A stretch of 64,000 nt of DNA from Macrostomum lignano (lineage: Eukaryota), in the NCBI GenBank assembly GCA_002269645.1, contig NIVC01000323.1, forward strand, positions 186,001-250,000. The letters are read 5' to 3'. Shown here piece after piece: positions 30,776-54,487 of this stretch. Made by a program: the position numbers and the translations under genes. The notes below the pieces were generated by a model, which was not told where the DNA came from, did not search any database, and saw only the letters and a list, made by a program, of their open reading frames with translations. Position 1 is the first letter of the stretch; each line of letters starts with the position of its first letter.

Positions 30776-33700
30776 ATGCAGAAACTGTCACTGCTTCTAG
30801 TAGCACTCTCACTACCGTTGTTTCCAACGCAACAGCTGCTGACTGAAGCAGCCGAAGCCATGGACTGCACCAGGCACCTGAGCGTGTACCTGGTTGTGCC
30901 CCGGTCCACCGCTTACTACCTGAGCGCTCCCACTCTGGTGCCAGCCTACAACCTGGCTTGGAAAACTATTCAACAGAGCGATCGCTATCATCGCCTTCTG
31001 AACAAGGTCACCAATGTGGTTCTCTACGAGGACATCAAGTGGTTCAACACTGTGCGCGGTCAGCCCGCTAGGGAGAACGGCAGGCCCAAGATGAGCACTG
31101 TGGACCCCTACTATCTCAACTACTATATGAATCCTTACTTTTACAACCTGTCTGCTGGGTGAGAGTCGCTGCTGATTTTCTTACCTGCAATTCTTGACAC
31201 CAAATGGATTTTTACTCTCCAAAATTGATTCCTCACCTCATGTACATCTTGATCAATCATGATAAATTTCATTTTAATCTCAAACTGATCTCATTAATCT
31301 CATCACTTATCTCACTTCTGTCTCATCCATAGTCTCATCTCCTATCTCATCTCCTATCTCAGTCCGATCTCATCTTCAAACTTACCCAATCTCATCTCCT
31401 ATCTCACCCCAATTAAATCTCTAATCTCACCCGATCTAATCCACTATCTCACCCGATCTCATCCCAAAATTCTCAACCTGATCTCATCCTCAAACTCACC
31501 CCAATTTAATCTCCAATCTCACCCCAAAATCATCTTCAATCTTAGTCCGATCTCATTCCTAATTCTCAACCTGATCTTATGCTCAATTCTCACCCCGACT
31601 TCATCTCCAATCTCACCACAATCTCATCTCCTATCTCACCCTTATCTCATCCTCAAACTCACCCCAATCTTATCCAATCTCACCCCTATCTCATCCTAGA
31701 ATAAGACTCATAAACTTCTAAGAACTGAGTTGAGAAGAAGAGAACCATATATGACATTAGTCATCTTGACAGGCCTCATTTTCGAATTCTATTGGTATTT
31801 GAAAATCGCCCTGGGGTTTGAGAGGCGACACACAAGATAAACTCCCTGCCTGCCGATGTCCCAGAGTTTACAGATCTGAGTTGCAGCAGCAGCAGCAGTT
31901 TTTGAGGGGTATCAAAGCTCATTTCCGGCCTAGAAATCCCGCATGGAAGGCGAGGGGGGGTTAGGGGAATCGATCTTGAAACTGCAACGCGGTGATTGAT
32001 TGCCCCGATGCCGGTTGGGATAACAGCTCCCCATCATCTCCCCTCCAATCCTTCTCAGGTTTCGATCTGAGCTTGGGGGCAGGCGGGGATCCTCTTTCTC
32101 TCCCTAATTCTAATTATCATTCTGAGGAGATTGTATCGGCGCTTAGGGGCCAGTCTCAGCCCTAGTCTTCTCCTGGGGGCATGTGAGCGGCTCGATTCCT
32201 TTCCCTGTTCTGAAATCTTTGCTCTTAATTTGTAATTCATCGGATTTGTAGAATTCAATCAATTAGATTAAATAGGGAAATCATTATTTTGCCAGTGTTT
32301 GCATATCTGTGTGTCTGTATGTCTATGTGTCTGCATGTCTGTGTCTGCATGCTTATGTCTGTATGTCTATGTGTCTGCATGTCTGTGTCTGCATGTCTGT
32401 GTCTGCATGTCTGTGTCTGCATGTCTATGTGTCTGCATGTCTGTGTCTGCATGCTTATGTCTGTATGTCTATGTGTCTGCATGTCTGTGTCTGCATGTCT
32501 GTGTCTGCATGTCTGTGTCTGCATGTCTATGTGTCTGCATGTCTGTGTCTGCATGCTTATGTCTGTATGTCTGTGTCTGCATGTCTGTGTCTGCATGCTT
32601 ATGTCTGTATGTCTATGTGTCTGCATGTCTGTGTCTGCATGTCTGTGTGTCTCCAAGTCTATGTATCTGCATGTCTGTGTCTGCATGTCTATGTCTGCAT
32701 GTCTGTGTCTGCATGTCTGTGTCTGCATGTCTGTGTCTGCATGTCTGTGTCTGCATGTCTATGTCTGTATTTCTATGTGTCTGCATGTCTGTGTCTGCAT
32801 GCTTATGTCTGTATGTCTATGTGTCTGCATGTCTGTGTCTGCATGTCTATGTCTGTATGTCTATGTGTCTGCATGTCTGTGTCTGCATGCTTATGTCTGT
32901 ATGTCTATGTGTCTGCATGTCTGTGTCTGCATGTCAATGTGTCTGTATGTCTATGTGTCTGTATGTCTATGTGTCTGCATGTCAATGTGTCTGTATGTCA
33001 ATGTGTCTGCATGTCTATGTGTCTGCATGTCCAAGTGTTTAATCTATGAGTAAAATCGATGTACATGCGTATTTTCAAGTCCGTTTATCTTAATGATTAT
33101 ACAGTATGCCTGTCTGCTAACTGTAAATAAAAGAATGGCAACCCAGCGTGTAGCAGAGCAGTTTGAAACAGCTGCATAGCCAAACCCGGCAACTATTTAC
33201 CAGCCTCCGTTGCCAGGTTGTTTTTCTTCTTTAACAAGCGCGCACGGCTGAGGCTGAGTCTAAAAATATGAAAATTACTTCAGCTGCCAGCACCTTCAGC
33301 GCAGGGCTGCTCCAGCGTGTGATTACTGTTCTGATCAGGAAGGAATCCCTGCAAGCCGTCATCTTCCGCGAGGCAGAAATCCCAATTAGAGTCTGGGGAG
33401 GAGGGGGGTCGAGATGGGGCTTTATTAGCGAATTTCGATGAGAGGCGGTGTGGAGACGATCTTTGAGAGTCATTGGCTTCATCAACTTTTTTGAACATCT
33501 CCAGTTGCTCTGTGAACGTTTTTATTAAATACGCTAAGCTCTACTAATGACATTGGCCATGGGGATCTGCTCTGGGTGACTCCATCCTTCTCTTCTATCA
33601 CCTGTTTTATCTGTCTGCCCCCTCCGCCCCCTCTGCCCCTCTGCCCCCTCCGCCCCCTCTGCCCTGCCCCCTCCGCCCCCTCTGCCCCTCTGCCACTCTG

Positions 33701-36700
33701 CCCCTCTGCCCCCTCTGCCCCTCTGCCCCTCTGCCCCCTCCGCCGGCTCTGCCCCTCTGCCCCTCTAACCCCTCCGCCCCCTCTGCCCCTCTGCCGGCTC
33801 TGCCCCTCTGCCCTGCCCCTCCGCCCCCTCTGCCCTCTGCTCATCTGCCCCTCTGCCCCTCTGCCACCTCTGCCCCTCTGCCCCTCTGCCCCTCTGCCCC
33901 CCTGCCCCCTCTGCTCCCTCCGCCCCCTCCGCTCCCTCTGCCCCTCCGCCCCTCTGCCCTTCTGCCCCTCTGCCCCTCTGCCCCCTCTGCCCCTCTGCCT
34001 CCTCTGCCCCTCTGCCCCCTCTGCCCCTCTGCCCCTCTGCCCTGCCCCCTCCGCCCCTCTGCCCCTCTGCCCCGCCCCCTCTGCCCCTCTGCCCCCTCTG
34101 CCCCTCTGCCCCTCTGCCCCTCTGCCCCCCCTGCCCCCTCTGCCCTCTCTACCCCCTCTGCCGGCTCTGCTCCTCTGCCCCCTCCGCCCCCTCTGCCCCT
34201 TCTGCCGGCTCTGCCCCTCTGCCCCTCCGCCCCTCTGCCCCTCTGCCCCCTGCCCCCTCTGCTCCCTCTACCCCCTCTGCCGGCTCTGCCCCTCTGCCCT
34301 GCCCCTCCGCCCCTCTGCCCCTCTGCTCATCTGCCCCTCTGCCCCTCTGCCACCTCTGCCCCTCTGCCCCTCTGCCCTCTGCCCCCCCTGCCCCCTCTGC
34401 CCCCTCCGCCCCCTCTGCCCCTCTGCCCTCTGCCCCTTTGCCCTCTCTACCCCCTCTGCCGGCTCTGCTCCTCTGCCCCCTCCGCCCCCTCTGCCCCCTC
34501 TGCCGGCTCTGCCCCTCTGCCCCTCTGCCCCTCTGCCCCTCTGCCCCCCCTGCCCCCTCTGCCCTCTCTACCCCTCTGCCGGCTCTGCTCCTCTGCCCCT
34601 CCGCCCCTCTGCCCCCTCTGCCGGCTCTGCCCCTCTGCCCCTCCGCCCCCTCTGCCCCTCTGCCCCCCTGCCCCCTCTGCTCCCTCTACCCCCTCTGCCG
34701 GCTCTGCCCCTCTGCCCTGCCCCTCCGCCCCCTCTGCCCCTCTGCTCATCTGCCCCTCTGCCCCTCTGCCACCTCTGCCCCTCTGCCCCTCTGCCCCTCT
34801 GCCCCCCTGCCCCTCTGCCCCTCCGCCCCCTCTGCCCTCTGCCCCTCTGCCCCTTTGCCCTCTCTACCCCCTCTGCCGGCTCTGCTCCTCTGCCCCCTCC
34901 GCCCCCTCTGCCCCCTCTGCCGGCTCTGCCCTCTGCCCCTCCGCCCCCTCTGCCCCTCTGCCCCCCTGCCCCCTCTGCTCTCTCTGCCCCCTCTGCCGGC
35001 TCTGCCCCTCTGCCCCCTCCGCCCCTCTGCCCCTCTGCCCCCCCTGCCCCCTCTGCCCCCTCTGCCCTGCCCCTCCGCCCCCTCTGCCCCTCTGCCCCTC
35101 TGCCCCTCTGCCCCTCTGCCCCCTCCGCCCCCTCTGCCCCTCTGCCCCTCTGCCCCTTTGCCCTCTCTACCCCCTCTGCCGGCTCTGCTCCTCCGCCCCC
35201 TCTGCCCCTCTGCCCCTCTGCCCCTCTGCCCCTCTGCCCCCTCCTCCCCTCTGCCCCTCTGCCCCTCTGCCCCTTTGCCCTCTCTACCCCCTCTGCCGGC
35301 TCTGCCCCTCTGCCCCCTCCGCCCCCTCTGCCCCTCTGCCCCCCCTGCCCCCTCCGCCCCCTCTGCCCCTCTGCCCCCTCCGCCCCCTGCCCTGCCCCCT
35401 CCGCCCCCTCTGCTCCTCTGCCACTCTGCCCCTCTGCCGCCTCTGCCCCCTCTGCCCCTCTGCCCCTCCGCCGGCTCTGCCCCTCTGCCCCCTCTAACCC
35501 CTCCGCTCCCTCTGCCCCTCTGCCGGCTCTGCCCCTCTGCCCTGCCCCCTCCGCCCCCTCTGCCCCTCTGCTCATCTGCCCCTCTGCCCCTCTGCCCCTC
35601 TGCCCCTCTGCCCCCTCTGCCCCCTCTGCCCCTCTGCCGGCTCTGCCCCTCTGCCCTCTGCCCCTCTGCCCCTCTGCCCCTCTGCCCCCCTGCCCCCTCT
35701 GCTCCCTCCGCCCCCTCCGCTCCCTCTGCCCCCTCCGCCCCCTCTGCCCCTCTGCCCCTCTGCCCCTCTGCCCCCTCTGCCCTCTGCCTCCTCTGCCCCT
35801 CTGCCCCCTCTGCCCCTCTGCCCCTCTGCCCTGCCCCCTCCGCCCCTCTGCCCCTCTGCCCCGCCCCCTCTGCCCCTCTGCCCCGCCCCCTCTGCCCTCT
35901 GCCCCTCTGCCCCTCTGCCCCTCTGCCCCCTCCGCCCCTCTGCCCTCTGCCCCTCTGCCCCTCTGCCCCCTCTGCCCCTCTGCCCCTCTGCCCCTCTGCC
36001 CCCTCCGCCCCTCTGCCCCTCTGCCCCTCTGCCCCTCTGCCCCTCCGCCCCTCTGCCCCTCTGCCCCTTTGCCCCCTCTGCCCCTCTGCCCCGCCCCCTC
36101 TGCCCCTCTGCCCCCTCTGCCTTTTCTCGTTCCTTCTGTCCCCTCTGCATTCTTTCTGAGCCTCTTTGATCCCCTTTTGTTCCTTTTGCGCCATCACCGC
36201 TTCCCCTGTTCCTCACAGTTCCACTCTGCAGGCAGTCCACGTCTGCAGACTCTGCACTGCTTTTCAATCTTTCAAGTGTGCCCGAGCTCTCTTTGGTCGA
36301 TTAGCAAATTATACGGGGGGCAAGCAATGACTGACCTCACGCTTATAGTCTGCTGAAATTATGGGATTGGATGGTGCTGGGTGTTGCCTCTGGGGCTTGC
36401 TGAGCTGCTGGAAAGTGCATGCGGACTTGCTCTGGTAAAACACGGCCAGGGCTACTCGTGAAGTGGCTCTCAGCTGCACAGCGGGATGTCTCTGGGTAGA
36501 TTTGCCTTGCATGACCGACTTTTGGCCGGCTCGAGTGGTGAAATGAACGATTTTTAATTGGTGCGGTCGAATCTCGGCCTTTTTAATGGAATTATTGCTG
36601 CCGCTGGCGGGCCTCCAGCTCTGCTTCTAGTCAGCTTTGCCGGGCGGGTGCTTGCTTGAGTTAAATGCTTTTTCTTGTGAATGGGTCTGCCTGTCTATCT

Positions 36701-36799
36701 GTCTGTCTGTCTGTCTGTCTGTCTGCCTGTCTGTCTGTCTGTCTGCCTGTCTGTCTGCCTGTCTGTCTGTCTGTCTGCCTGTCTGTCTGTCTGTCTGCC

Positions 36800-36864
<65 letters not shown>

Positions 36865-36887
36865 GCCTGTCTGTCTGTCTGTCTGCC

Positions 36888-36970
<83 letters not shown>

Positions 36971-36971
36971 G

Positions 36972-37018
<47 letters not shown>

Positions 37019-37114
37019 GTGTCTGTCTGTCTGTCTTAGTGTCTGCCTGTCTGTCTGTCTGTCTGTCTATCTGTCTGTCTGTCTGTCTGCTGTCTTATTG
37101 TCTGTCTGTCTGTG

Positions 37115-37189
<75 letters not shown>

Positions 37190-37190
37190 G

Positions 37191-37241
<51 letters not shown>

Positions 37242-37337
37242 GTGTCTGTCTGTCTGTCTTAGTGTCTGCCTGTCTGTCTGTCTGTCTGTCTATCTGTCTG
37301 TCTGTCTGTCTGCTGTCTTATTGTCTGTCTGTCTGTG

Positions 37338-37372
<35 letters not shown>

Positions 37373-37373
37373 G

Positions 37374-37424
<51 letters not shown>

Positions 37425-40400
37425 ATGTCTGTCTGTCTGTGTCTGTCTTTCTGCTTGTGAGAGATGGTTGAGATGCAGTGAGATTTGGGTTGAGATTCAG
37501 GTGAGTCATGGGTTGAGATGCTGGTGAGAGATTGGTTGAGATTCAGGTGAGAGATGGGTTGAGATGCAGGGGAGAGATTGGTTGATATTTAGGTGAGATT
37601 TGGGTTTAGATTCAGTTGAGAAATGGTTGAGATGCAGGTGAGAGATTGGTTGAGATTCAGGTGAGAGATGGGTTGAGATGCAGGTGAGAGATGGGTTGAG
37701 ATGCAGGTGAGAGATGGGTTGAGATGCAGGTGAGAGATTGGTTGAGATTCACGTGAGAGATGGGGTGAGATGCAGGTGAGACATATGGAATCGGGATTTT
37801 CAAAAATACAATTACTCCAGCCATCCTACTTAAAGTCAAAAAAGCGATTGCAAAAACAAGAAGCAGACTTCATTGTTAAAAAAAACTGAATCGATGCTCT
37901 CGCCTCTTGTTGAGCAAACAGTTTTGAGCAAACTCTCTGCAGAGCCACGAGGATTCGGGAGGGGCTGAGGAAGCGGATTAGCTTTCTTAGAAAACATTAT
38001 TAGTATTAATTATTTATGGCCAGTAAGTTTTGCCTCCACTCAAAAAACCTCTCTCTCTCTCTCCCGCACCTCGCCACTTACTTTGCTGAGCACACATCAG
38101 CCGAAAAACTGAAGTGTGGATGCGGGGCAGCTGCCATCTCTGTCGGGTCGTCAGTGATTGGAGCTTCACACCGATGGCTTCGTCTGCACTTAACTGCTTC
38201 AGGCTCTGCTGCTGCACTTCCTTTACTATTGGGGAAAGCCGGCCGAATTAACTGGGGCATTCTGGGCTGCGGCTGATTATAGCAGCTGGGGAATATTTGC
38301 CAAAATAAACTCATTTTTTTAATTTCATGGAGCTGGAGATGGAGCTACGTGTCGTTGAAGTGAGGGGAGAAGTAAATAGAAAGAAAGATACAGGGAAGAG
38401 GGAAGAGGGAAGAGAGGAGAGAGGAGAGGGGAAGAGAGAAGAGAGGGGAAGGGGAGTAAGGGAGATGGGGAGAGGGGGAGAGAGGAGAGGGGAGAGAATA
38501 AATGGAGAGAGGAGAGGGGAGAGAGGAGAGAGGAAAGGGAGAGAGGAGAGGGGAGAGAATAAATGGAGAGAGGAGAGGGGAAGAGAGAAGAGAGGAGAGG
38601 GGAAGAGAGAGAAGAGGGGAGAGAATAAATGGTGAGAGGAGAGGGGAAGAGAGAAGAGAGGAGAGGGGAAGAGAGAGAAGAGGGGAGAGAATAAATGGTG
38701 AGAGGAGAGGGGAAGAGAGAAGAGAGGAGAGGGGAAGAGAGAGAAGAGGGGAGAGAATAAATGGTGAGAGGAGAGGGGAGAGAATAAATTGAGAGAGGAG
38801 AGGGGAGAGAATAAATGGTGAGAGGAGAGGGGAGAGAATAAATGGAGAGAGGAGAGGGGAAGAGAGAAGAGAGGAGAGGGGAAGAGAGAGAAGAGGGGAG
38901 AGAATAAATTGAGAGAGGAGAGGGGAGAGAATAAATGGAGAGAGGAGAGGGGAGAGAATAAATGGTGAGAGGAGAGGGGAGAGAATAAATGGAGAGAGGA
39001 GAGGGGAGAGAATAAATGGTGAGAGGAGAGGGGAGAGAATAAATGGTGAGAGGAGAGGGGAGAGAATAAATGGAGAGAGGAGAGGGGAGAGAATAAATGG
39101 TGAGAGGAGAGGGGAGAGAATAAATGGAGAGAGGAGAGGGGAGAGAATAAATGGTGAGAGGAGAGGGGAGAGAATAAATGGTGAGAGGAGAGGGGAGAGA
39201 ATAAATGGAGAGAGGAGAGGGGAGAGAGGAGAGAGGAAAGGGAGAGAGGTAGAGAAAGGGGAGAGGGGGGAGAAAAGGGAGAGGGGGAGAAGGGGAGAGG
39301 GGGAGAGAGGGAAGAAGGGGAGGGAGGGCAGAGAGGAGACGGTAGAGGGAAAGAAGGGGAGAGGTGGAGGGGGAGAGAGGAGAGAGGAGAGAGCAGAGGT
39401 AGAGAGAAGGGAAGAAAGCGAAGAGAGAGGAGAGGGGAGCGGTAGAGAGAGGGTAGAAGGGGAAAGGGGGAGAGAGGAGAGAGGAGACGGGAGAGCGCAG
39501 CAATACTCGTAGATTTAGCAATCGTTAGTAAGTGTTTTTAAAGACACCTGGAATAGCTTTGAGCCACGATAGCTTCAAAATTGGTGTGTCCATGATTCCC
39601 CCCCCCCAGTGCTTTTTTCAAGCAGTGCATTTCGCCTTCAATTACAACATTAGTATATATTATTATCAATAGATAGATTTAGTGGGACGAAGCGACATGG
39701 CATGTGCATTAATTAATAGTTCACCGATCGACGTAACCCTACACGTATATACAAATGAAAACCTCTCCGCTACGAAAAAGCCTGAGCCCAACCCCCTCCT
39801 CATTGAAGAAATTTGATATGCATTTACGATCGGTACGTTTTGATTGGGTAAATCTCTTTTATTTAGACTTAAGAAACATTTTATGTCTTATTCTGCTACA
39901 ACGGTAAATTCTAGTGGTCCTTGAGCTTGCGATGGGTCACAATAAGAGAGGGGGAGAGAGTGAAGAGGGAAATGATAGGAATAGAGGGGAGAGATGATAC
40001 AGAGGAGGGAGGAGAGATGCGAGAGAGGGTGACGGGAGAGAGAGGGGATACAGAGGCGAGAAGTGAGAGAGGAGAGAGGATGATAAAGAGGAGAGAAAAG
40101 AGATGGGAGAGGGTGGGATATAGGGAGAAACGGGAGAGAGGAGGAGAAGGGAGAGGAAGAGAGGGAAGAGTTGGAAGAGAGGTCAAAAGAGGGGAGAGAG
40201 GGCGAGGGGGAGATGGGGAGAGAAGGGGGATAGGGAGAGAAGGGAGATAGGGAGAGAAGGGGGATAGGGAGAGAAGGGGGATAGGGAGAGAAGGGAGATA
40301 GGGAGAGAAGGGAGATAGGGAGAGAAGGGGGATAGGGAGAGAAGGGGGATAGGGAGAGAAGGGAGATAGGGAGAGAAGGGAGATAGGGAGAGAAGGAGGA

Positions 40401-43400
40401 TAGGGAGAGAAGGGGGATATGGAGAGAAGGGGGATAGGGAGAGAAGGGGGATAGGGAGAGAAGGAGGATAGGGAGAGAAGGGGGATAGGGAGAGAAGGGG
40501 GATAGGGAGAGAAGGGAGATAGGGAGAGAAGGAGGATAGGGAGAGAAGGGGGATAGGGAGAGAAGGGAGATAGGGAGAGAAGGGAGATAGGGAAAGAAGG
40601 GAGATAGAGGAGGGAGAGAAGAGAGAGAGGAGAGAAGGGGGATAGGGAGAGAAGGGAGAGAGGAGAGAAAGGGGATAGGGAGAGAAGGGAGATAGGGAGA
40701 GAAGGGAGATAGGGGAGAGAAGGGAGATAGGGAGAGAAGGGAGATAGGGAGAGAAGGGAGATAGGGAAAGAAGGGAGATAGGGAAAGAAGGGAGATAGAG
40801 GAGGGAGAGAAGGGAGAGAGGAGAGAAGGGAGATAGGGAGAGAAGGGAGATAGGGAAAGAAGGGAGATAGGGAAAGAAGGGAGATAGAGGAGGGAGAGAA
40901 GGGAGAGAGGAGAGAAGGGAGATAGGGAGAGAAGCGAGATAGAGGAGGGAGAGAGGAGAGAGGGGTAGAGAAGGGATCGATAGGGAGAGAAGGGAGATAG
41001 GGGAGAGAAGGGAGATAGGGAGAGAAGGGAGATAGGGAAAGAAGGGAGATAGGGAAAGAAGGGAGATAGAAGAGGGAGAGAAGGGAGAGAGGAGAGAAGG
41101 GAGATAGGGAGAGAAGCGAGATAGAGGAGGGAGAGAAGGGAGAGAGGAGAGAGGGGTAGAGAAGGGATCGATAGGGAGAGAAGGGAGAGAGGGAGAGAGG
41201 GAGAGAGGGAGAGAGTTGAGAGAGTGAGAGTTAGAATAAGTGGATTAAGATTGAAGGAGAAAGGGAGACCGAAACCCATTTTTTGTGAAACACACAAAAG
41301 TCCGTCCACTCAGCTTGGAAACCTCTTTTCTGACTTTTTTTCTCCGGTTTTCAATTCAGACTCAAAAACTGTCTAAGCAGTAAAAATCGGAATAGTTTAT
41401 CAGCTACTTTATAACCAAATCTTCACTTCCTGTCCAACTCGGTGCTACTCTGAATTTCAACTTCCGGCCCTCTCTGATCTTCTCAATTATTTTCGCTCTT
41501 CACTTTTGCCCTCAGTTTTTAACTGGTCACGGAATGCCGCCAGAGCTGGTCGGTTTTACTAATTTTACTTTTTTCGAGTTCAGACGTGCCAGTGCTGGGC
41601 CGGTCAGCTCTTTTCGGGAAAATATGTGAAAATAGAGTGAATTTTAATTTAACGCAAAAATAATCTTTAATTATTTGGCGCCAAAATAGCAAAATAAAAC
41701 TATTATTTTAATTCGGCGCCAGAATTTTTGTTTAGCTAAGCAACTAATTTAACGCCAAAATTAATTATCGTTTAATTCGGCGCCAAAATATTACGGGTAG
41801 ATTAAGAGCCAAATATTTTCAATTTGGCGCCAAAAGTATTAGTTTAACTTACGGTTAAATTAAATGCCAAAATATTATTTAATTTGGCGCCAAAACATTT
41901 GTTTAACCTAGGAATAAATTAAGAGCCAAAATACTATTTAATTTGGCGCTAAAATATTTGTTTAACTTACGGTAAAATTAAGAGCCAAAGTATAATTTAA
42001 TTTGGCGGCAAAAATATTTTCTTAGCTTACGGTTAAATTACGAGCCCAAATATTATTTAACTTGGCGTCAAATATTTGTTTAATTGGGTGCCAACTATAG
42101 CAGTTTAAATTGGCGCCAAAATAGAAGATTTGATTCGTCGTTATCAAATTCAAGTAGATTTAACGGATCTAATCAATTCAAGAAGGCAGAGGCGCCACTG
42201 CTAGAAGAATACTCGGCGTTTTCAACCCCGTGTTTGCCAGTGGATTTTTCTGTTTCCTGGAACCGAGAGAATTTGAGTAGGGGGGGGGGGGGTGGGGCAG
42301 CAACGATGCTGCATGCGGAGAACCCTGAGGGCCATGCAGCCCCCTCCCCCCCCCGGAGGGAGCATCCTGCATGGCTTTTCATCGAGAAACATCATGGTTT
42401 TTTGCTAAAGAAAATCCCCCAGGAACCGGTCAACATCCCTTGCTTCTCTTTTGTCCCAAACATCACGTAGGCCTCGGCTGTAGCCACATCGTGCAGTTTT
42501 ATATATGAATTCCCTACAGAGTCGAGCATATCTTTTGTTGCCAACATAAGATTGGGACATTTTCCCCGGTTCTCCGCTGTCCGCTGACATTTTTACGTCA
42601 AAGATGCTCGAATCCTGCTAGAATCCCGAATTGTTCAGAATCCCGAATTTCTCAGAATCTTGAATTTCTCAGAATCTTGAATTTCTCAGAATCCCGAATT
42701 TCTCAGAATCCCGAATTTCTCAGAATCTTGAATTTCTCAGAATCTTGAATTTCTCAGAATCCCGAATTTCTCAGAATCCCGAATTTCTCGGAATCCCGAA
42801 TTTCCCAGAATCCCGAATTTCTCAGAATCCCGAATTTCTCGGAACCCCGAATTTCTCAGAATCCCAAATTTCTCAGAATCCCGAATTTCTCATAATCCAG
42901 AATTTCTCAGAATTTTGAATCTCTCAGAACCCCGAATTTCTCAGAATCCCGAATTTCTCAGAATCCCGAATTTCTCAGAAACCCGAATTTTTCTGAATCC
43001 CAAATTTCTCTGAATCCCGAATTTCTCAGTATCCTGAATTTCTCAGAATTTTGAATCTCTCAGAACCCCGAATTTCTCAGAATCCCGAATTTCTCAGAAT
43101 CCCGAATTTCTCAGAATCCCGAATTTCTCAGAATCCCGAATTTTTCTGAATCCCGAATTTCTCAGAATCCCGAATTTCTCACAATCTCAAACATCTACCG
43201 ATTTCAGAATCCGAAAAGGTGAATTAGTTAAAAACAAAAACATCAATTCCCAAATTCTCCCATCCGCAGGCAGCTCTGCATTCACGCATTTTTCGGACCG
43301 GTGACTGATTACGCAATCACGCAGTTCATCCCGTTCACATTTCACAATCGGATACCGGAAGTCACGCCGGGAGCCGTGCGAGACGTCTTTCACGACAGAC

Positions 43401-43688
43401 AGGGCACCAGAATGATCCGGGTGACCCCGTTTCGAATGGAGGTGCTGCCAGACATCATTCGAGTGTTCATGCGGGACAACAACTGGCGGCGGGTGACCTT
43501 TGTGTTCAGAGAGGTGGCCTACCAGCCGTCAGATGACATCCCCAGTTTGAGAGGCTTGGGCCAGGCGCTCATGAACTGGTGCACCAGGATATCCGGTGCC
43601 CTGTACGGCATCGACTGCGTGTTCGAGTTGGCTGGCTCGCTGAGCTGGGAGGATGTGCTGACCAGGAAAGTTGGCACTGGGAAGGCCT
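30776..43688 (+). CDS. ANF-receptor ectodomain cassette A (signal peptide + N-terminal part of a natriuretic-peptide-receptor/receptor-guanylyl-cyclase-type ligand-binding domain), 267 codons. Exons 30776-31158 and 43270-43688; no downstream exon found
   Basis: The exon 1 donor (GG|GTGAG, phase 2) joins the exon 2 acceptor (CAG|G) in frame across a 12.1-kb intron. Product has [38 protein letters not shown] and [10 protein letters not shown]. It ends [14 protein letters not shown] at a phase-1 GTGAGT donor. Confidence 0.75.
31270..31700. repeat. Degenerate ATCTCA-rich repeat
   Basis: Recurrent ctcatctc/ctcacccc..atctc motifs. Confidence 0.75.
32300..33035. repeat. 14-bp minisatellite (tgtgtctgcatgtc)
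   Basis: Tandem copies. Confidence 0.95.
33610..36125. repeat. C-rich 8-9-bp satellite (ctgcccct)n, G-rich on the minus strand
   Basis: 2.5-kb low-complexity array. Confidence 0.97.
36685..37450. repeat. (TCTG)n microsatellite
   Basis: Long tetranucleotide run with variants. Confidence 0.97.
37455..37790. repeat. 23-bp minisatellite (gttgagatgcaggtgagagatgg)
   Basis: Tandem copies. Confidence 0.9.
38380..41230. repeat. Two purine-rich (GA) satellite arrays (38380-39500; 39945-41230)
   Basis: Units gagaggagaggggagagaataaatg and gggagagaagggagata. Confidence 0.95.
41670..42125. repeat. About 59-60-bp degenerate tandem repeat with a TTTGGCGCCAAA core
   Basis: Core at about 41823, 41883, 41942, 42001 and 42061, plus less regular copies. 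Confidence 0.8.
42620..43185. repeat. 17-bp minisatellite (gaatcccgaatttctca)
   Basis: Tandem copies. Confidence 0.95.
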
Positions 43689-43689
43689 G

Positions 43690-45200
43690 TGAGTGTACAG
43701 TGTGTCTAACAGGGTTTACAGTGTGTCTAACAGGGTTTACAGTGTGTCTAACAGGTTTTACAGTGTGTCTTACAGGTTTTAAAACGTGTCTAACAGTGTT
43801 TACAGTGCGTCTAAAAGCTTTTTAAAGTGTATCTTAAACAGGGTTAACAGTGTTTCTAACAGGGTGTACTGTGTATCTAACAGGGTGTACAGTGTGTCTA
43901 ACAGTGTTTACAGTGTGTCTAACAGGTTTACAGTGTGTCTAACAGGTTTTACAGTGTGTCTTACAGGTTTTAAAACGTGTCTAACAGTGTTTACAGTGCG
44001 TCTAAAAGCTTTTTAAAGTGTATCTTAAACAGGGTTTTCAGTGTTTCTAACAGGGTGTACTGTGTATCTAACAGGGTGTACAGTGTGTCTAACAGTGTTT
44101 ACAGTGTGTCTAACAGGTTTACAGTGTGTCTAACAGTGTTTACAGTGTGTCTAACAGTGTTTACTGTGTGTCTAACAGTGTTTACAGTGTGTCTAACAGT
44201 TTTTTAATGTGTATCTAACAGTGTTTACAGTGTGTCTAACAGCTTTTTAAAGTGTGTCTAACAGGTTTTACAGTGTGTCTAACAGGTTTTAAAGCGTGTC
44301 TAACAGGGTTTCTAGTGTGTCCAACAGGGTTTACAGTGTGTCTAACAGGTTTTACAGTGTGTCTAACAGGTTTTACAGTGTGTCTAACAGGTTTTACAGT
44401 GTGTCTAACAGCTTTTTAAAGTGTATCTAACAGGGTTTACAGTGTGTCTAACAGTGTTTACAGTGCGTCTAACAGCTTTTTAAAGTGTATCTAACAGGGT
44501 TTACAGTGTGTCTAACAGGGTTTACAGTGTGTCTAACAGGGTGTACAGTGTGTTTAACAGCTTTTTAAAGTGTATCTAACAGGGTTTCCAGTGTGTCTAA
44601 CAGGGTGTACAGTGTGTTTAACAGCTTTTTAAAGTGTATCTAACAGGGTTTAAAGCGTGTCTAACAGGGTTTACAGTATCTAACAGGTTTTACAGTGTGT
44701 CTTACAGCTTTTTAAAGTGTATCTAACAGGGTTTCCAGTGTGTCTAACAGGGTTTCCAGTATGTCTAACAGGGTTTCCAGTGTGTCTAACAGGATTTTCA
44801 GTGTGTCTAACAGGGTGTCCAGTGTGTCTAACAGGGTTTACAGTGTGTCCAACAGGGTGTACAGTGTATCTAACAGAGTTTACGGTGTATCTAACAGGGT
44901 TTACAGTGTGTCTAACAGGGTTTCCGGTGTGTCTAACGGGGTTTACAGTGTCTAACAGGGTTTCCAGTGTGTCTAACAGGATTTTGCTGTGTGTCGAACA
45001 GTTCTACAATATCTAACACATCAACAGTATCTAACAGCTCTTCAGTATCTAACAGATCTACTGTATCTAACACATCTACAATATCTAACACATCAACAGT
45101 ATCTAACAGCTCTTCAGTATCTAACAGATCTACCGTATCTAACACATCTACAGTATCTAACGGATATACAATATCTAACGGATGTACCGTACAGTATCTT
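43690..45200. repeat. 21-bp minisatellite (tctaacagggtttacagtgtg) starting at the cassette A donor
   Basis: Tandem copies degenerating toward 45200. Confidence 0.93.
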
Positions 45201-46059
45201 ACGGGTGTACAATATCTAACAGGTAGCCAATTTGTAATGAGTAGGACCATGAATTGAACGTATAAAACATTACACGCATGAACTTGTGAATTCGGAGGCT
45301 TCCTGTAGATGCAATTTAGCAAATCTTCCACACATAATTTTATCATATTTATGCTAATTATCCTACTTCTAAACAGTAGACAAATAGCAAATCGAATTTG
45401 ATAGGGGAAATTTGTTTTAACGATTTTTACGCTTTTCGTCTGGCTAAAAAACACGTTCTTACTACTTACAGTAACTGAAAAGCAAATAGTAGCATAAATC
45501 TATTAAGGGGTATTGCTAAGTTAAAATTTTGAAAGCATTGTTGAGGCATTATTGAGAATTTTACAATTCCGCTTGTCGGACCCCAGCCGAAAAAAGCAGC
45601 GGCTTTCTGAATGTCTGCCCGTTTAGTCTGTCTGCCTCAGCGAGATTTTGCAGCGCTTAGCAAACAAGCCAGTCATTGCTGCCCCCGCACCTTTTTTAAT
45701 GAATAAGCTGCAGTTTAAGCTCCTGGCTTGTTGACTCAAGTATGGGCGCTGCGCTGCACTGCCCCAGCAACTGGCATTGCTCTGAGGACTCTGGGGAATG
45801 CTCAGTGCAATGCATGCTAAAGTGAAATGCTTCCAGTACAGCATGCCGAATTTCGGCTGGCTTGATAATTATGAAAATAATCATTCCGCGTCACGATTTT
45901 TGAATTTCATTTCATGCCTGTCTACCTGCCTGGCTGAGGCGGCAAAAAAACACAACAGCTTCTTGTTCCTGTCGTCATCTCTTCTGTCTGCCTGTCTTCT
46001 GTGCGGATGGTTATTTCCTGAGACCTAATACTTTTCTGGATGGAAGCTGGGCTCTATTA

Positions 46060-47080
46060 GGTTGCTGCGAGCTTATTTGGGGCGCTATTAGGTGCATTAT
46101 TAGGGATGCTATTATGGCGCTATTAGGTGCACTATTAGAGACGCTATTAGGGTGCTATTAGGAGCGCTATTAGGACGCTATTAGGTAGCTATTAGATAGC
46201 TTTTGGGCACCATTAAGGCGCTATTATGGGACTATTAGGGTCGCTATTAGGGAAACCATAGAGAGCTTTTTGGTGCACTATTAGGGATGCTATAATGGGC
46301 ACTATTAGGGATGCTATAATGGGCATTATTAGAGTGCTATTAGGGGCACTATTAGCGACGCTATTAGGGTGCTATTAAGAGCGCTATTAGGACGCTATTA
46401 GGTTGCTATTAGGTAGCTTTTGGGCACCATTAGGGCGCTATTATGGGACTATTAGGGTCGCTATTAGGGAAACCATAGAGAGCTTTTAGGTGTACTATTA
46501 GGGATTCTATTATGGGCACAATTACGAGTACAGCGCTATTAGGTGCGCTATTAGGGCGCTATTAGGGCGCTATTAGAGGCCCTATTAGGACACTATTAGT
46601 TGCCCTATCTAATTTAAAACACCATTTTATTTGTGACTTTTGGGTCGTTCTATACTGTTTGTTTTATTTAAAACTCTTGTTTAATTGCAGCATTAGCGAT
46701 TCATTTTGATAAATTAACTAATTCAAATTGTCTCCCGATGAGGTGCCCCGACTCATGAAATGGTCTTTAATGCAGTTTTATGACCTTGTTGGGTGCCTCT
46801 ACCTTTTGTTAGGCGCCTCTGTCTTTATGAAAGGTGCCCCTGTCTCTTGGTTGGCGCCCCTGTCTCTTAGTTGGCGCCCCCTGTCTCTTAGTTGGCGCCC
46901 CTATTTTTTGGTTAGCGCCCCTGTCTCTTAGTTGGCGCCCTTATCTTTTGGTTGGCGCCCCCTGTCTCTTGTTGGGCGCCCCTGTCTCTTGTTGGGCGCC
47001 CCTGTCTCTTGTTGGGCGCCCCTGTCTCTTGTTGGGCGCCCCTGTCTCTTGTTGGGCGCCCCTGTCTCTCGGTGGGCGCC
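46060..47080. repeat. GCTATTAGG degenerate array (46060-46610) and 20-bp cctgtctcttgttgggcgcc array (46830-47080)
   Basis: Tandem copies. Confidence 0.88.
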
Positions 47081-47244
47081 ATATTAAGATCATTTTTAAT
47101 CTGTTTTAAAATGAGACAAAATTTGTTTAAAGAAATCAGTTCAAACCAACCAAAGCCATGGCTTAAGGGCGTTTCCCAACCCCAAGGAGACCCGCGCCAT
47201 TCCCACGATTCTCTTTCTCTCTTCTTGCCAGCAACACCAACCAC

Positions 47245-47254
47245 AGCCAATCAG
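47245..47254 (+). promoter_or_regulatory. CCAAT (NF-Y) box upstream of cassette B
   Basis: AGCCAATCAG with CCAAT at 47247, 193 nt before the ATG. TATA-like CATAAAATA at about 47310. Confidence 0.45.
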
Positions 47255-47439
47255 TCAGCGCCTCTGCCTCTGCCTCTGCCTCCTCTCTCCTCTTCTCTCT
47301 TACCAACTCCATAAAATACAGCCAAACACATTATCAATAGGCTAAAACACTTCTGTCGTGTATAATGCTGCATACAGCTGGTAGTTGTCTCCCGAACGCA
47401 TCTAAGAAATTCAAAAGCTAGACAGTATCGCTAAGCGCA

Positions 47440-48208
47440 ATGCTTGCTTCTAAAAGCGCCGCAGCAATCTTGCTTCTGTGCCTGTGTCTGTCCGCCGCTG
47501 TCACCGCTTCAACAAAGAAGAACATCACGGTCCTGCTGTTGGCGACAAAGTACGACTCAGTTGGTCACCAAGTGGTCAGTCCGCTCGAACTGCTGCAGGC
47601 TACATTCGATGTTGCAATGCAGCATCCCGCTGTTCTTCAAGCTCTCGGCCACTCAATCCAGCTGGTCAAGCAGCCGGAAGACTTCCCTTGCGAACACGTG
47701 GCTTCAATCAGGGAGCTGATGGCCCTGAAGTGCAAGCAGCACGAGTCCTCAACTGGAGTGCAGCCGCGCCTCATCACTGGCTTGCTGTGCTCATACTCCA
47801 TCAACAATGTGTTTCTGTACTACAAGCACAGCATCGACACTTTCATTTCCACCGGTGCCCTGTCTGGCAGCCTCGACAGGTACGACTTGATCAGGGTTGG
47901 CACCACGGGCAAAGGCATCTTCGACACAATGCAGTCAGTCATGACCAACCTGGGAGGCTGGAAGCGGCTATTCTTCATCAATCGACGAAAAAGTGTCGTG
48001 GCTACTGACGGCAGACCCAGCTACTTCCTGGACCTGTTCCAATGCCAGTTCGTAGAGAAAGTCTTTGAATTCAATTTCAAGCAAAACATGTCCTACATGT
48101 ACGAGTCAATGACGCTGGATTCTCAAATTGATGAAGACTTGAAGCTGAACATTACGGACGAGCTGTACCGGAAGATCCTGCTGGAAAGAGTTGGGAATAA
48201 ACTGGCTG
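47440..48208 (+). CDS. ANF-receptor ectodomain cassette B (signal peptide + N-terminal part of the ligand-binding domain), single 769-nt exon; no downstream exon found
   Basis: Signal peptide MLASKSAAAILLLCLCLSAAVTA, then NITVLLL, LITGLLCSYS, LIRVGT and GGWKRLFFI. It ends YRKILLERVGNKLA at a phase-1 G|GTGAGT donor. Confidence 0.75.
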
Positions 48209-48286
48209 GTGAGTGGGGAGGCGGTTGCCGGCAGACATGCCTTCTTGGGATTCTTTGAGATGAGGCTCGAAGTTTAAGCACAAAAT

Positions 48287-49530
48287 CTGGGATCTGCAAT
48301 CTGGGATCTGCAATCTGGGATCTGCAATCTGGGATCTGCAATCTGAGATCTGCAATTTGGGATCTGCAATCTGGGATCTGCAATCTGGGATCTGCAATCT
48401 GGGATCTGCAATCTGGGATCTAGAATCTGGGATCTGCAATCTGGGATCTAGAATCTGGGATCTGCAATCTGGGATGTACAATCTGGGATCTGCAATCTGT
48501 GATCTGCAATCTGGGATCTGCAATCTGGGATCTGCAATCTGGGATCTACAATTTTGGATCTGCAATTTGGAATCTGCAATCTGCGATCTGCAATCTGGGA
48601 TCTGCAATCTGGGATCTGCAATCTGGGATCTGCAATCTGGGATCTGCAATCTGGGATCTACAATCTGGGATCTGCAATCTGGGATCTGCAATCTGGGATC
48701 TGCAATCTGGGATCTGCAATCTGGGATCTGCAATCTGGGATCTGCAATCTGGGATCTGCAATCTGGGATCTGCAATCTGGGATCTGCAATCTGGGATCTG
48801 CAATCTGGGATCTGCAATCTGGGATCTGCAATCTGGGATCTGCAATCTGGGATCTGCAATCTGGGATCTGCAATCTGGGATCTGCAATCTGGGATCTGCA
48901 ATCTGGGATCTGCAATCTGGGATCTGCAATCTGGGATCTGCAATCTGGGATCTGCAATCTGGGATCTGCAATCTGGGATCTGCAATCTGGGATCTGCAAT
49001 CTGGGATCTGCAATCTGGGATCTGCAATCTGGGATCTGCAATCTGGGATCTGCAATCTGGGATCTGCAATCTGGGATCTGCAATCTGGGATCTGCAATCT
49101 GGGATCTGCAATTTGGGATCTGCAATCTGGGATCTGCAATCTGGGATCTGCAATCTGGGATCTGCAATCTGGGATCTACAATCTGGGATCTACAATCTGT
49201 GATCTGCAATCTGGGATCTGCAATCTGGGATCTGCAATCTGGGATCTGCAATCTGGGATCTGCAATCTGGGATATGCAATCTGGGATCTGCAATCTGGGA
49301 TATGCAATCTGGGATCTGCAATCTGGGATCTGCAATCTGGGATCTGCAATCTGGGATCTGAAATCTGGGATCTGCAATCTGGGATCTGCAATCTGGGATC
49401 TGCAATCTGGGATCTGCAATCTGGGATCTGCAATCTGGGATCTGCAATCTGGGATCTGCAATCTGGGATCTGCAATCTGGGATCTGCAATCTGGGATCTG
49501 CAATCTGGGATCTGCAATCTGGGATCTGCA
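48287..49530. repeat. 14-bp minisatellite (ctgggatctgcaat)
   Basis: Highly homogeneous array just after the cassette B donor. Confidence 0.97.
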
Positions 49531-50394
49531 AAAGTATTTTTCCCCGTCAAAGAATTGTCCTAGGAGACAAATCTCTAATAAAAAGATTATTAATAATTTC
49601 TATCAAATAAGCACTAATCGACACTGACATGCATGCGATGGTCAAAAGAAAATGATAAAATTATTTGAAATGACAAAGGATCAATTTTTTGGGCGGGGCG
49701 CCCTTTTCAAAAGCGGCCGTAGCTAACATTTAGTTTTAGTAGTTGAGGCAACATGCAAGAAATATCATGCTTGTATGCTTAGTGCGATTACCAAAATGCC
49801 CTTTTATCTTCAATTGCCCGCGGAGAGACGCGGGGATTTTTCTGCCAGGCCAAGACGTGGGTCCGACACAGGAAGGGAGAAGTAGACAGCATGTCTCCTG
49901 GCTGGGTTACCCCTGGGTGGGAGGGCATGGAGGGTAGAGGGTGAAGCTATGTAGCTAGCCTCGCGTGTGTTTGAGGTCATTCTTGACAGCTTAATCGGTA
50001 ATTTTGAACGGGGTTTGGCAGTCAACGAGAGCTCGATATGATTTGATTAGTAGATTCGATTTAAATGGCGTACCGTGTGCGGCTAAAGCTATAACCCGGT
50101 GAAGATAAAAAATATATAGCTACGTGGAAGAAAGACACGTAAAGGTTGTCATTAACAATTTATGATTTAATTTTCGTATGGACAATTTAATAAAAGAACG
50201 CATGGTCGGTGGGTGACCCTTTGGGTGCACTGGGATTTGGGTGCACTAGAAAATCGACCAAGTGGTTTGTCGAGCGATTCACATGCACACCATTGGGTGA
50301 ACTCCCATGGCACAGAGAGTGTACATGCCGGACGATTAGAAAGTCAGGAGCCGCTGTGCACCCCGTGTGAGCGTGTCTATGCGTGCGTGCCTGC

Positions 50395-53295: not shown

Positions 53296-53372
<77 letters not shown>
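52670..53372. repeat. GA-rich low-complexity tract and (GA)n run at 53300-53370
   Basis: Visible purine runs. Confidence 0.9.

Positions 53373-53374
<2 letters not shown>

Positions 53375-54057: not shown

Positions 54058-54487
<430 letters not shown>

What the first reader, a model, noticed from the sequence alone, without database searches (positions are those of the whole stretch)
30776..48208. Tandem ANF-receptor N-terminal cassettes ending at equivalent open splice donors: candidate variable-first-exon receptor array
Seen: two same-strand, highly divergent units (267 and 256 codons). Each starts with a signal peptide and shares ANF-receptor landmarks: [10 protein letters not shown] / LITGLLCSYS, MIRVTP / LIRVGT, NWRRVTF / GWKRLFF. 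Both stop at the homologous position ([14 protein letters not shown] / YRKILLERVGNKLA) at a phase-1 GTGAGT donor. I found no continuation exon (the VIxxC strand, TM, kinase-homology or cyclase domains) in the 3.75 kb between them. Known, from memory: vertebrate NPR1/NPR2 exon 1 also ends with a phase-1 intron just before the VIYIC-type strand. Clustered protocadherins and UGT1A use alternative promoter-bearing first exons spliced to shared constant exons. Inference: this could be a combinatorial receptor guanylyl cyclase/peptide receptor locus in which many ligand-binding N-termini share one downstream constant region. I know of no such arrangement described for this family.
Basis: partly seen in the sequence, partly recalled or inferred. 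Interest (0 to 1): 0.85.

Follow-up and report, generated by a model that had tools for sequence, protein, structure and literature searches.

The report
Alternative ligand-binding cassettes of a guanylyl cyclase receptor
The window holds the first two of four alternative "front halves" of the hormone-binding domain of one flatworm (Macrostomum lignano) receptor guanylyl cyclase gene, each spliced to a single shared back end 30 kb past the window; related genes in molluscs, ribbon worms and a horseshoe crab are annotated with the same layout, so it is real and old but not unprecedented.

Summary
The window is Macrostomum lignano scaffold C323:186001-250000.

- **The two units.** U1 is two exons, 30776-31158 and 43270-43688. 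U2 is one exon, 47440-48208. Each has its own ATG and signal peptide, encodes the N-terminal half of an NPR-type ANF-receptor domain, and ends at a phase-1 GTGAGT donor.
- **The rest of the gene.** Two further cassettes (U3, U4) and one set of constant exons lie 12-41 kb beyond the window. The constant exons carry the rest of the ectodomain, TM, kinase-homology and cyclase domains.
- **Frames.** All four cassettes join constant exon c1 in frame.
- **U2 is shown.** U2→c1 is in the transcript-derived GenBank model on this scaffold (PAA85496.1) and in a spliced contig from an independent sequencing run.
- **U4 and U1.** UniProt models join U4→c1. In a paralogous locus a U1-type cassette is joined to that locus's constant exons in a transcript-derived model.
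- **Not shown.** No transcript was found for U1 or U3 at this locus.
- **Not new as a layout.** The array is conserved in four paralogous loci. RefSeq isoforms in ten other species have identical constant regions but 25-46 % identical N-termini.

It is a new member of a known kind, and I found no paper describing the layout.

The parts
30776..31158 (+). Cassette U1, exon 1: ATG, signal peptide ([17 protein letters not shown]) and the first ~105 mature residues. The donor is GG|gtgaga, phase 2.
   Evidence: Sequence and frame. It is collinear at 44 % identity, across the exon junction, with the transcript-derived paralogue PAA62240.1. Cassette HMM hit.
31159..43269 (+). 12.1-kb intron inside cassette U1, filled with unrelated tandem-repeat arrays. 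The unit lengths found are 4, 8, 14, 17, 23 and 27 nt.
   Evidence: No coding hit to the cassette or constant profiles.
43270..43688 (+). Cassette U1, exon 2 (139 codons; [10 protein letters not shown] ... KVGTGKA). The acceptor is ccgcag|GCA and the phase-1 donor is CCT|gtgagt.
   Evidence: PF01094 E = 4.9e-4 alone. E = 1.4e-12 against the non-Macrostomum cassette HMM. Intact in three genomic copies and in paralogous loci B, C and D.
43689..47439 (+). 3.75-kb spacer between U1 and U2. It holds a 21-nt tandem array (43696-45001) and other repeats but no coding exon. It presumably carries the U2 promoter and 5'UTR.
   Evidence: That it acts as a promoter is inferred.
47440..48208 (+). Cassette U2, a single exon of 256 codons plus 1 nt: ATG, signal peptide (MLASKSAAAILLLCLCLSAAVTAS) and the N-terminal half of the ANF-receptor domain. 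The phase-1 donor is CTG|gtgagt.
   Evidence: Sequence. It is the N-terminus of GenBank PAA85496.1, encoded on this scaffold. Among the three genomic copies, codon differences are 7 synonymous to 1 non-synonymous, 6 to 2, and 9 to 1. The AlphaFold/Foldseek top hits are NPR-C and NPR-A.
48209..64000 (+). First 15.8 kb of the 45.9-kb intron that U2 transcripts splice out. It runs on past the window end. Beyond the window (C323 minus 186000) lie U3 (76079-76476 and 81440-81795), U4 (85295-85613 and 87089-87511), constant exon c1 (94141-94252) and the remaining constant exons up to the stop codon ending at 104633.

Best explanation
The region is the 5' part of one NPR/GCY-28-type receptor guanylyl cyclase gene of Macrostomum lignano (GenBank BOX15_Mlig024971g2). 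The gene carries a tandem array of four alternative N-terminal cassettes, U1 to U4. The window contains U1 and U2.

**What each cassette provides**
- Its own start codon and signal peptide.
- The first ~230-250 residues of the hormone-binding domain. This is a periplasmic-binding-protein type I fold, and the cassette ends just before the strand that reads VIYIC in NPR-A and VVLCAD here.
- A phase-1 donor at its 3' end.

**How the isoforms form**
- The donor of the cassette in use is spliced to the single phase-1 acceptor of constant exon c1, at C323:280141. This skips any cassettes that lie in between.
- The constant exons add the second half of the ectodomain, the transmembrane helix, the kinase-homology domain, the coiled coil and the cyclase domain.
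- The gene can therefore make four receptors with identical signalling parts but different N-terminal halves of the ligand-binding and dimerising domain.
- The most likely purpose is different ligand specificity, different cell-type expression, or both.

**Shown**
- The gene anatomy and reading frames.
- Homology of every cassette to the NPR N-terminal half.
- U2→c1 splicing.
- One constant region only.
- Conservation of the array in four paralogous loci and of the design in other phyla.

**Inferred**
- Use of U1 and U3 at this locus.
- That each cassette has its own promoter, rather than an SL trans-splice site or a shared upstream start.
- The functional consequence.
For: **Anatomy**
- tblastx of paralogous locus B against 134 kb of C323 shows conserved coding blocks for U2, U3 and U4 and then one constant region. 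U1-type cassettes lie upstream of U2 in loci A, B and C.
- All splice sites are GT-AG. All four cassettes end in phase 1, and each gives an open frame of 1160-1180 aa with the constant exons.

**Domains**
- The constant part has the C-terminal half of ANF_receptor, PK_Tyr_Ser-Thr and Guanylate_cyc.
- Each cassette raises the ANF_receptor score and extends the alignment across the junction.
- U4 plus the constant ectodomain aligns end to end with human and rat NPR-A ectodomains (E = 2e-58). The junction falls at ...RKGR|VIYICSS.

**Only one array and one constant region**
- The cassette HMM finds exactly seven exons, which are U1 to U4.
- The constant exons occur only once in C323:166001-300000.

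**Transcript evidence**
- GenBank proteins PAA85496.1, PAA64474.1 and PAA90871.1 join U2 to the constant exons with exactly the predicted junction. They include a 12-nt microexon.
- That annotation was built only from RNA-seq and de novo transcripts, with minor isoforms filtered out (PMC5730564).
- A 1677-bp Logan contig from run SRR28338163 reads U2-type→c1→c2 without introns.
- UniProt A0A1I8HYF3 joins U4 to the constant exons.
- In locus D, transcript-derived PAA62240.1 uses a U1-type cassette and UniProt A0A1I8IW40 uses a U4-type cassette on the same constant region.

**Selection**
- The three copies of U2 differ mostly at synonymous sites.

**Conservation**
- The cassette order U1-U2-U3-U4-constant is seen in full in loci A and B. 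Locus C keeps U1-like, U2-like and the constant region in that order and has a U4-type model. Locus D has U1-type and U4-type cassettes on one constant region.
- Isoforms in ten other species have identical constant regions over the 400 residues compared, while their cassettes are 25-46 % identical.
- One cassette type is a supported clade spanning bivalves, a gastropod, a nemertean, a brachiopod and a horseshoe crab.
- Lottia has a phase-1 intron at the same position.
Against: - No transcript or database model joins U1 or U3 of this locus to c1. The three copies of U1 exon 2 differ too little to test for selection.
- The evidence behind the UniProt U4 models is unknown. They may be ab initio predictions.
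- Two-exon cassettes have internal acceptors (U3b phase 2, U4b phase 1) that upstream donors must skip. I found no conserved intronic element or convincing RNA pairing that would explain the choice.
- Promoters were not observed.
- In the cassette tree, the Macrostomum cassettes do not group confidently with particular mollusc types.
Confidence: 0.85

Rival explanations
1. U2 and the proximal U4 are the only working 5' ends. U1 at this locus (and perhaps U3) is a decaying or silent relic of exon duplication that is no longer spliced to the constant exons.
For: No model or transcript contains U1 or U3 of locus A. U1 exon 1 scores weakly against the independent cassette HMM (E = 0.03). The three copies of U1 exon 2 give no selection signal: 1 to 1, 1 to 1, and 2 to 0 synonymous to non-synonymous codon differences. 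The U3 signal peptide is the least hydrophobic of the four.
Against: U1 exon 2 is an open frame in all three copies, and the spliced U1 model on this scaffold keeps its ATG, signal peptide and both splice sites, with a phase-1 donor at the homologous position. U1-type cassettes are kept in paralogous loci B, C and D at 45-49 % identity. The locus D cassette is used in a transcript-derived model. The published annotation pipeline dropped isoforms below 75 % of the major one, so absence from GenBank says little.
Confidence: 0.2
2. The cassettes are chosen by mutually exclusive splicing, or by spliced-leader trans-splicing, of one long primary transcript that starts upstream of U1. They do not have separate promoters.
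For: 38.8 % of M. lignano genes are SL trans-spliced and many transcription units are polycistronic precursors (PMC5730564). A good acceptor-like site (tttgtaaaacag|AAGTC) lies 5 nt upstream of the U1 ATG. The internal acceptors of U3b and U4b have to be skipped in any case.
Against: The spliced U2-type contig from SRR28338163 has a 5'UTR of at least 153 nt. From memory of the Macrostomum leader sequence, I could not recognise a spliced leader in it. No conserved docking or selector element was found between paralogous loci. In the known variable-exon loci (UGT1A, protocadherins; from established knowledge) each variable exon has its own promoter.
Confidence: 0.2
3. The cassettes are separate small genes that encode secreted half-domain proteins, and the long U2-plus-constant models are chimeric assemblies.
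For: Each cassette has its own ATG and signal peptide. UniProt A0A1I8F652 shows that predictors can mis-join cassettes.
Against: None of the cassettes has a stop codon or a terminal exon; all end at open phase-1 donors. Half a periplasmic-binding-protein fold is unlikely to be stable (inference). The constant region has no other N-terminus of its own than U4, and only one constant region exists. The U2→c1 junction recurs in three genomic copies, in paralogues B and C, and in an independent spliced contig. The same design is annotated in ten other species.
Confidence: 0.03

Closest known systems
RefSeq 'atrial natriuretic peptide receptor 1-like' and 'gcy-28-like' multi-isoform genes of molluscs (Mytilus, Crassostrea/Magallana, Ostrea, Saccostrea, Mercenaria, Mya, Haliotis), a nemertean (Lineus) and a horseshoe crab (Tachypleus)
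   Same: The constant regions are homologous (56-61 % identical over the ectodomain half for the molluscs and nemertean, 54 % for the horseshoe crab). Isoforms of one gene share a constant region, identical over the 400 residues compared, that starts at [VI]VVLCA. They differ completely in a ~225-275-residue N-terminus that has its own signal peptide. Lottia has the same phase-1 intron at the junction.
   Different: Those are database predictions, and I found no paper that discusses them. The Macrostomum cassettes are much more diverged, and two of the four are not annotated at all. The tandem genomic order of the cassettes was checked only in Macrostomum. The Haliotis gene spans 320 kb and its DNA could not be fetched.
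Caenorhabditis elegans gcy-28 (UniProt Q86GV3), isoforms a-d
   Same: It is a receptor guanylyl cyclase, and databases use its name for relatives of this gene. [quoted passage not shown] An isoform-specific function is recorded (PMC5290486).
   Different: Whether the worm isoforms differ in the N-terminal half of the ectodomain, at the same junction, I recall only from memory and could not check. The key papers (Tsunozaki 2008, Shinkai 2011) are not held.
UGT1A and clustered protocadherin loci (variable first exons spliced to shared constant exons)
   Same: Both have a tandem array of alternative 5' units, each with its own start codon and signal peptide and an open donor. All units join one first constant exon, and only one set of constant exons exists.
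   Different: Three of the four cassettes here have two exons, so internal acceptors must be skipped. There are only four units. The swapped part is half of a single fold rather than a whole domain. Separate promoters are not shown. How the UGT1A and protocadherin loci work is from established knowledge and was not tested here.
Vertebrate natriuretic peptide receptors NPR-A and NPR-C (PDB 1dp4, 1t34, 8tg9, 1jdn, 1yk0)
   Same: U4 plus the constant ectodomain aligns over the whole NPR-A ectodomain (E = 2e-58). The U2 model's best structural matches are NPR-C and NPR-A. The domain order ECD-TM-KHD-cyclase is the same.
   Different: To my knowledge vertebrate NPR genes have a single first exon. 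The ligand of the flatworm receptor is unknown.

Membership tests
ANF_receptor (PF01094), periplasmic-binding-protein type I fold | Significant match to the family profile | tested here: met
   Alone, U1 exon 2 scores 19.7 bits, below the 25.4-bit cut-off, and U2 gives no hit. As spliced isoforms the scores are U1 126, U2 114, U3 151 and U4 162 bits, against 102.6 bits for the constant part alone, and the alignments cross the junction.
ANF_receptor (PF01094), periplasmic-binding-protein type I fold | Alternating beta/alpha fold that superposes on solved NPR ectodomains | tested here: met
   The AlphaFold model of U2 alone has pLDDT 77.1 and pTM 0.67. The Foldseek top hits are 1jdn, 1yk0 and 1jdp (NPR-C; best E = 6e-8, TM 0.58-0.61 normalised to the query, 227-230 columns), then 8tg9, 1t34 and 1dp4 (NPR-A). 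Caveat: the alignment used for the model contained NPR-like sequences. U1 was not modelled.
Receptor guanylyl cyclase, NPR/GCY-28 type | ECD, single TM helix, kinase-homology domain and class III cyclase domain in one polypeptide | tested here: met
   The constant region matches Guanylate_cyc at 1.8e-69 and PK_Tyr_Ser-Thr at 1.3e-39, plus ANF_receptor positions 181-352. It has one hydrophobic helix, ATYAVVVLLVLICVLSVVIAVIY. For U2 the full-length protein is the GenBank model.
Receptor guanylyl cyclase, NPR/GCY-28 type | Ligand-stimulated cGMP synthesis | not testable with these tools
   This needs expression and a cGMP assay.
Variable-first-exon / constant-exon locus (UGT1A and protocadherin type) | Tandem array of alternative 5' units upstream of one set of constant exons | tested here: met
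   There are four cassettes and one constant region in 134 kb.
Variable-first-exon / constant-exon locus (UGT1A and protocadherin type) | Each unit is joined directly to the first constant exon in mature mRNA | tested here: inconclusive
   U2: yes, from transcript-derived GenBank models and a spliced Logan contig. U4: only UniProt models of unknown evidence. U1: only by analogy with the paralogue in locus D. U3: no evidence.
Variable-first-exon / constant-exon locus (UGT1A and protocadherin type) | Each variable unit is a single exon without an acceptor site | tested here: not met
   U1, U3 and U4 each have two exons with an internal intron (12.1, 5.0 and 1.5 kb). Only U2 is a single exon.
Variable-first-exon / constant-exon locus (UGT1A and protocadherin type) | Own promoter in front of every unit | not testable with these tools
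   No 5'-end or chromatin data are available here. The 5'UTR of at least 153 nt on the spliced U2-type contig is compatible with an own start.

The most novel reading that the evidence does not exclude
Protostome NPR/GCY-28-type receptor guanylyl cyclases carry an ancient, conserved array of alternative half-ectodomain cassettes. At least one cassette type is shared from flatworm relatives to horseshoe crabs. One gene therefore encodes several receptors for different ligands, and possibly heterodimers among them. This principle has not been described in the literature, and in Macrostomum it has been kept through three rounds of locus duplication.
Probability: 0.45. Interest if true: 0.65.

Novelty: new member of a known kind. 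Interest (0 to 1): 0.5.

Why it matters
Ligands of protostome receptor guanylyl cyclases are mostly unknown. One was assigned only recently: ion transport peptide acting through Drosophila Gyc76C (PMC13267572).

If one gene supplies four interchangeable N-terminal halves of the binding domain, a knock-down or an expression study that ignores isoforms mixes up to four receptors.

From my memory of the NPR-A structures, the N-terminal half carries most hormone contacts and the dimer interface. Cassettes U1 to U3 keep a cysteine at the position that pairs with the constant-region cysteine in NPR-A (the disulfide map is from memory).

The array gives a natural domain-swap series for finding ligands and for asking how half of a periplasmic-binding-protein fold can be exchanged.

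For annotation, it explains why gene predictors give conflicting or frameshifted models at these loci, for example UniProt A0A1I8F652. It also shows that two cassettes per locus are missing from the M. lignano gene set.

Tried and rejected
1. **Docking/selector RNA pairing.** I looked for a Dscam-like mechanism that could explain skipping of the internal acceptors.
   - RNAduplex of the 600 nt after each donor against the 2.5 kb upstream of c1 gave only gappy, repeat-driven duplexes.
   - blastn found no conserved non-coding element between the U4-c1 introns of loci A and B.
   - The idea has no support but is not excluded.
2. **Full-length AlphaFold model of PAA64474.1.** It reached only pLDDT 52 and was not used.
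3. **Third protein-database search.** I cut the U1 query to 613 aa, so the length window (337-1073 aa) excluded full-length models. The empty result says little.
4. **Genomic loci of the mollusc and nemertean isoforms.**
   - Three look-ups found no record.
   - The Haliotis rubra gene spans 320 kb and no DNA was returned.
   - The Lottia gene that I could read has one cassette and only 10 kb of upstream sequence, so it does not settle whether an array exists there.
5. **Annotation of the window's own scaffold.** The look-up is blocked for this genome.
6. **Reading U2 as an internal exon after U1.** An AG at 47424-47425 is in the right phase, but it follows a purine-rich stretch. Using it would place the signal peptide inside the protein. 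Rejected.
7. **Literature.**
   - Four full-text searches for this layout in receptor guanylyl cyclases found nothing relevant.
   - Further searches and reads on C. elegans gcy-28 confirmed promoter-specific isoforms, but not how they differ.
   - The two key gcy-28 papers and Ortiz 2006 are not held.
Full report
**Where the window is.** The window is C323:186001-250000 of a 764-Mb eukaryotic assembly. Protein matches identify it as Macrostomum lignano, assembly Mlig_3_7. Most loci appear three times at about 99 % identity. The published description of this assembly reports the same redundancy and links it to the additional large chromosomes of the sequenced line (PMC5730564).

**Checking the observation.**
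- U1 consists of exon 30776-31158 and exon 43270-43688, separated by a 12.1-kb intron of tandem repeats.
- U2 is the single exon 47440-48208.
- Both start with an ATG and a hydrophobic leader. Both end one base into a codon at a GTGAGT donor.
- Taken alone the units are poor Pfam matches: U1 exon 2 gives E = 4.9e-4 and U2 gives nothing.
A profile made only from the N-terminal cassettes of other animals finds U1 at 4e-15 and U2 at 7e-5 over its full length. These exons are the best of 2717 six-frame ORFs in 134 kb.
- An AlphaFold model of U2 (pLDDT 77) superposes best on NPR-C and NPR-A ectodomains.
- U1 and U2 are only 23 % identical to each other (E = 0.007).

**Finding the rest of the gene.**
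- A genome-wide ANF_receptor search gave one further hit on the same strand of the scaffold, at C323:281304. It covers only the second half of the domain.
- Around that hit lie exons for a transmembrane helix, a kinase-homology domain and a guanylyl cyclase domain.
- Searching the genome with U1 and U2 showed the order U1-like, U2-like, ANF second half in two further loci (B on C1069, C on C10). Each is present in three copies. A fourth locus (D on C37) has a U1-like exon.
- Comparing locus B with 134 kb of C323 at the protein level revealed two more conserved cassettes between U2 and the constant region.
  - U3 is C323:262079-262476 plus 267440-267795.
  - U4 is C323:271295-271613 plus 273089-273511.
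- U3 and U4 also begin with an ATG and a signal peptide. In locus B the U3 leader is unambiguous.
- All four cassettes end in phase 1. Exon c1 has a strong phase-1 acceptor (ccaacccttcag|TCG).
- Each cassette gives an open reading frame of 1160-1180 residues with the nine constant exons, all with GT-AG introns.
- A cassette HMM finds exactly these seven exons in C323:166001-300000. The constant exons occur once.
The reason is that the continuation lies 46-51 kb downstream.

**Is the splicing real?**
- The protein database holds GenBank PAA85496.1 (BOX15_Mlig024971g2, on this 354,091-bp scaffold) and its two near-identical copies.
- These proteins are U2 joined to the constant region at exactly the predicted junction (…ERVGNKLA-V-VVLCADPD…).
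- They contain four residues that I had missed. These come from a 12-nt microexon at C323:285065-285076 with good splice sites.
- The GenBank annotation of this assembly was made only from RNA-seq and de novo transcripts (StringTie, TACO, TransDecoder). Isoforms below 75 % of the major one were discarded. So the junction rests on RNA, and the absence of other isoforms is not informative.
- Independently, a 1677-bp contig assembled from run SRR28338163 encodes a U2-type cassette (67 % identical) followed without interruption by c1 and c2. It then runs into the next intron.
  - Since 46 kb and 1 kb of intron are missing, it must derive from spliced RNA, presumably of a related species.
  - I could not see the run's metadata.
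- UniProt models from the older assembly join U4 to the same constant region (A0A1I8HYF3).
- In loci B and C the GenBank models again use the U2-type cassette and the UniProt models the U4-type.
- In locus D the transcript-derived GenBank model PAA62240.1 uses the U1-type cassette. It has the same internal exon junction as I infer for U1 here: 44 % identity over 234 residues, E = 3e-67. A UniProt model puts a U4-type cassette on the identical constant region.
- No model or transcript with U1 or U3 of this locus was found.
- The three copies of U2 differ at 7, 6 and 9 synonymous codons against 1, 2 and 1 non-synonymous codons, which indicates purifying selection. U1 exon 2 has too few differences to judge.

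**How it most likely works.**
- U4 plus the constant ectodomain aligns with the entire NPR-A ectodomain. This places the cassette boundary at …RKGR|VIYICSS of NPR-A.
- Each cassette therefore supplies roughly the first 210 mature residues of the fold and the constant exons supply the rest.
- Three cysteine columns are conserved among cassettes.
  - The first two are lost together in U1-type cassettes.
  - The third is kept in U1, U2 and U3.
  - From memory of the NPR-A disulfide map, that third position pairs with the cysteine in the constant strand VVLC.
- I conclude that the gene makes up to four receptors. They share the transmembrane and signalling parts but differ in the half of the binding domain that, in NPR-A, holds most hormone contacts and the dimer interface (from memory).
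- Separate promoters are the simplest way to choose a cassette, but they are not shown. SL trans-splicing of a long precursor is a live alternative in this species.
- An open problem is that U3 and U4 have internal acceptors that upstream donors must ignore. I found no conserved intronic element or convincing pairing to explain this.

**Comparison with what is known.**
- The same search that found the flatworm models returned many RefSeq entries named "atrial natriuretic peptide receptor 1-like isoform X…" or "gcy-28-like".
- In Mercenaria, isoforms of one gene have four different N-termini.
- In Mytilus edulis and M. californianus they have three each.
- In Crassostrea, Ostrea, Saccostrea, Mya, Haliotis, Lineus and Tachypleus they have two each.
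- In every one of these genes the isoforms share an identical constant region over the 400 residues compared, starting at [VI]VVLCA. Their N-termini are only 25-46 % identical, and each full-length cassette begins with its own hydrophobic leader.
- In a cassette tree, one type (ending …SR[IV]VVLC) is a fully supported clade spanning bivalves, a gastropod, a nemertean, a brachiopod and a horseshoe crab. Other types are shared by bivalves and gastropods.
- The flatworm types U1, U2 and U4 each predate the duplication of loci A-D, but they sit on long branches.
- Lottia has a phase-1 intron at exactly the same place.
- C. elegans gcy-28 is documented to have promoter-specific splice isoforms with different expression and function (PMC9249223, PMC3842693, PMC5290486). 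That they differ in the N-terminal ectodomain I recall but could not verify.
- Four full-text searches for this layout in receptor guanylyl cyclases found no paper describing it as a conserved variable-cassette array.

**Verdict.**
- The design resembles UGT1A and protocadherin loci in logic. It fails the single-exon criterion, and its promoters are untested.
- It is not a new kind of arrangement for this gene family, because public annotations of many species already contain it.
- It is a further, more diverged member, with two unannotated cassettes per locus.
- Its depth of conservation seems not to have been discussed in print.

Noticed in passing
C323:285065-285076 (window-equivalent 99065-99076, outside the window): A 12-nt microexon (GACAGTTCTATG, ag|...|gtaaga) in the kinase-homology region. 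It is present in the GenBank models (…SSYRRQFYDKLW…) but absent from the UniProt models (…SSYRNKLW…), so it may be alternatively spliced.
   Followed up: partly
window 24695-24967 (+): An open frame that reads like the P-loop exon of a Rab5-type small GTPase (…[39 protein letters not shown]…WDTAGQ). It is probably a separate gene 6 kb upstream of U1. No Pfam search was run on it.
   Followed up: no
window 43696-45001 and 48284-49531; C323:273560 onward: The donors of U1, U2 and U4 are each followed within 8-80 nt by a long tandem array with a different unit: a 21-mer, a 14-mer and a ~23-mer. Tandem repeats make up about 15 % of this genome, so this may be chance, and I did not test it against chance.
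   Followed up: no
window 33614-36121: A 2.5-kb array of about 300 copies of TCTGCCCC. GC is 76 % over window 34001-36000. It lies inside the U1 intron and creates open frames of up to 946 codons on both strands that are not genes.
   Followed up: partly
Locus B (C1069), UniProt A0A1I8F652 (P0134): This database model joins the U2-type cassette to the U3 first exon and then, by my comparison with the frames, appears to shift frame in U3's second exon. It is either a prediction error caused by the cassette array or a non-productive splice product.
   Followed up: partly
Cassette alignment, U1-type cassettes of loci A and D (window 30776-31158 and 43270-43688): Both cysteines of the first conserved pair are replaced together in U1-type cassettes (W and T or I). 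All other flatworm cassettes keep both. This is what one would expect for loss of a disulfide.
   Followed up: partly
L063 (Logan contig SRR28338163_312250), 1590-1677: The spliced U2-type transcript runs from exon c2 into the next intron (CAG|GTGAGTAA) and stops after two extra codons. It is either an unspliced intermediate or a soluble ectodomain-only isoform.
   Followed up: no
C323:295458-296549 and 297049-297924 (outside the window, downstream of the gene): A 364-codon open frame with a cysteine-rich C-terminal part that looks lectin-like, and a reverse-transcriptase-like frame of 292 codons. Neither was searched against Pfam.
   Followed up: no
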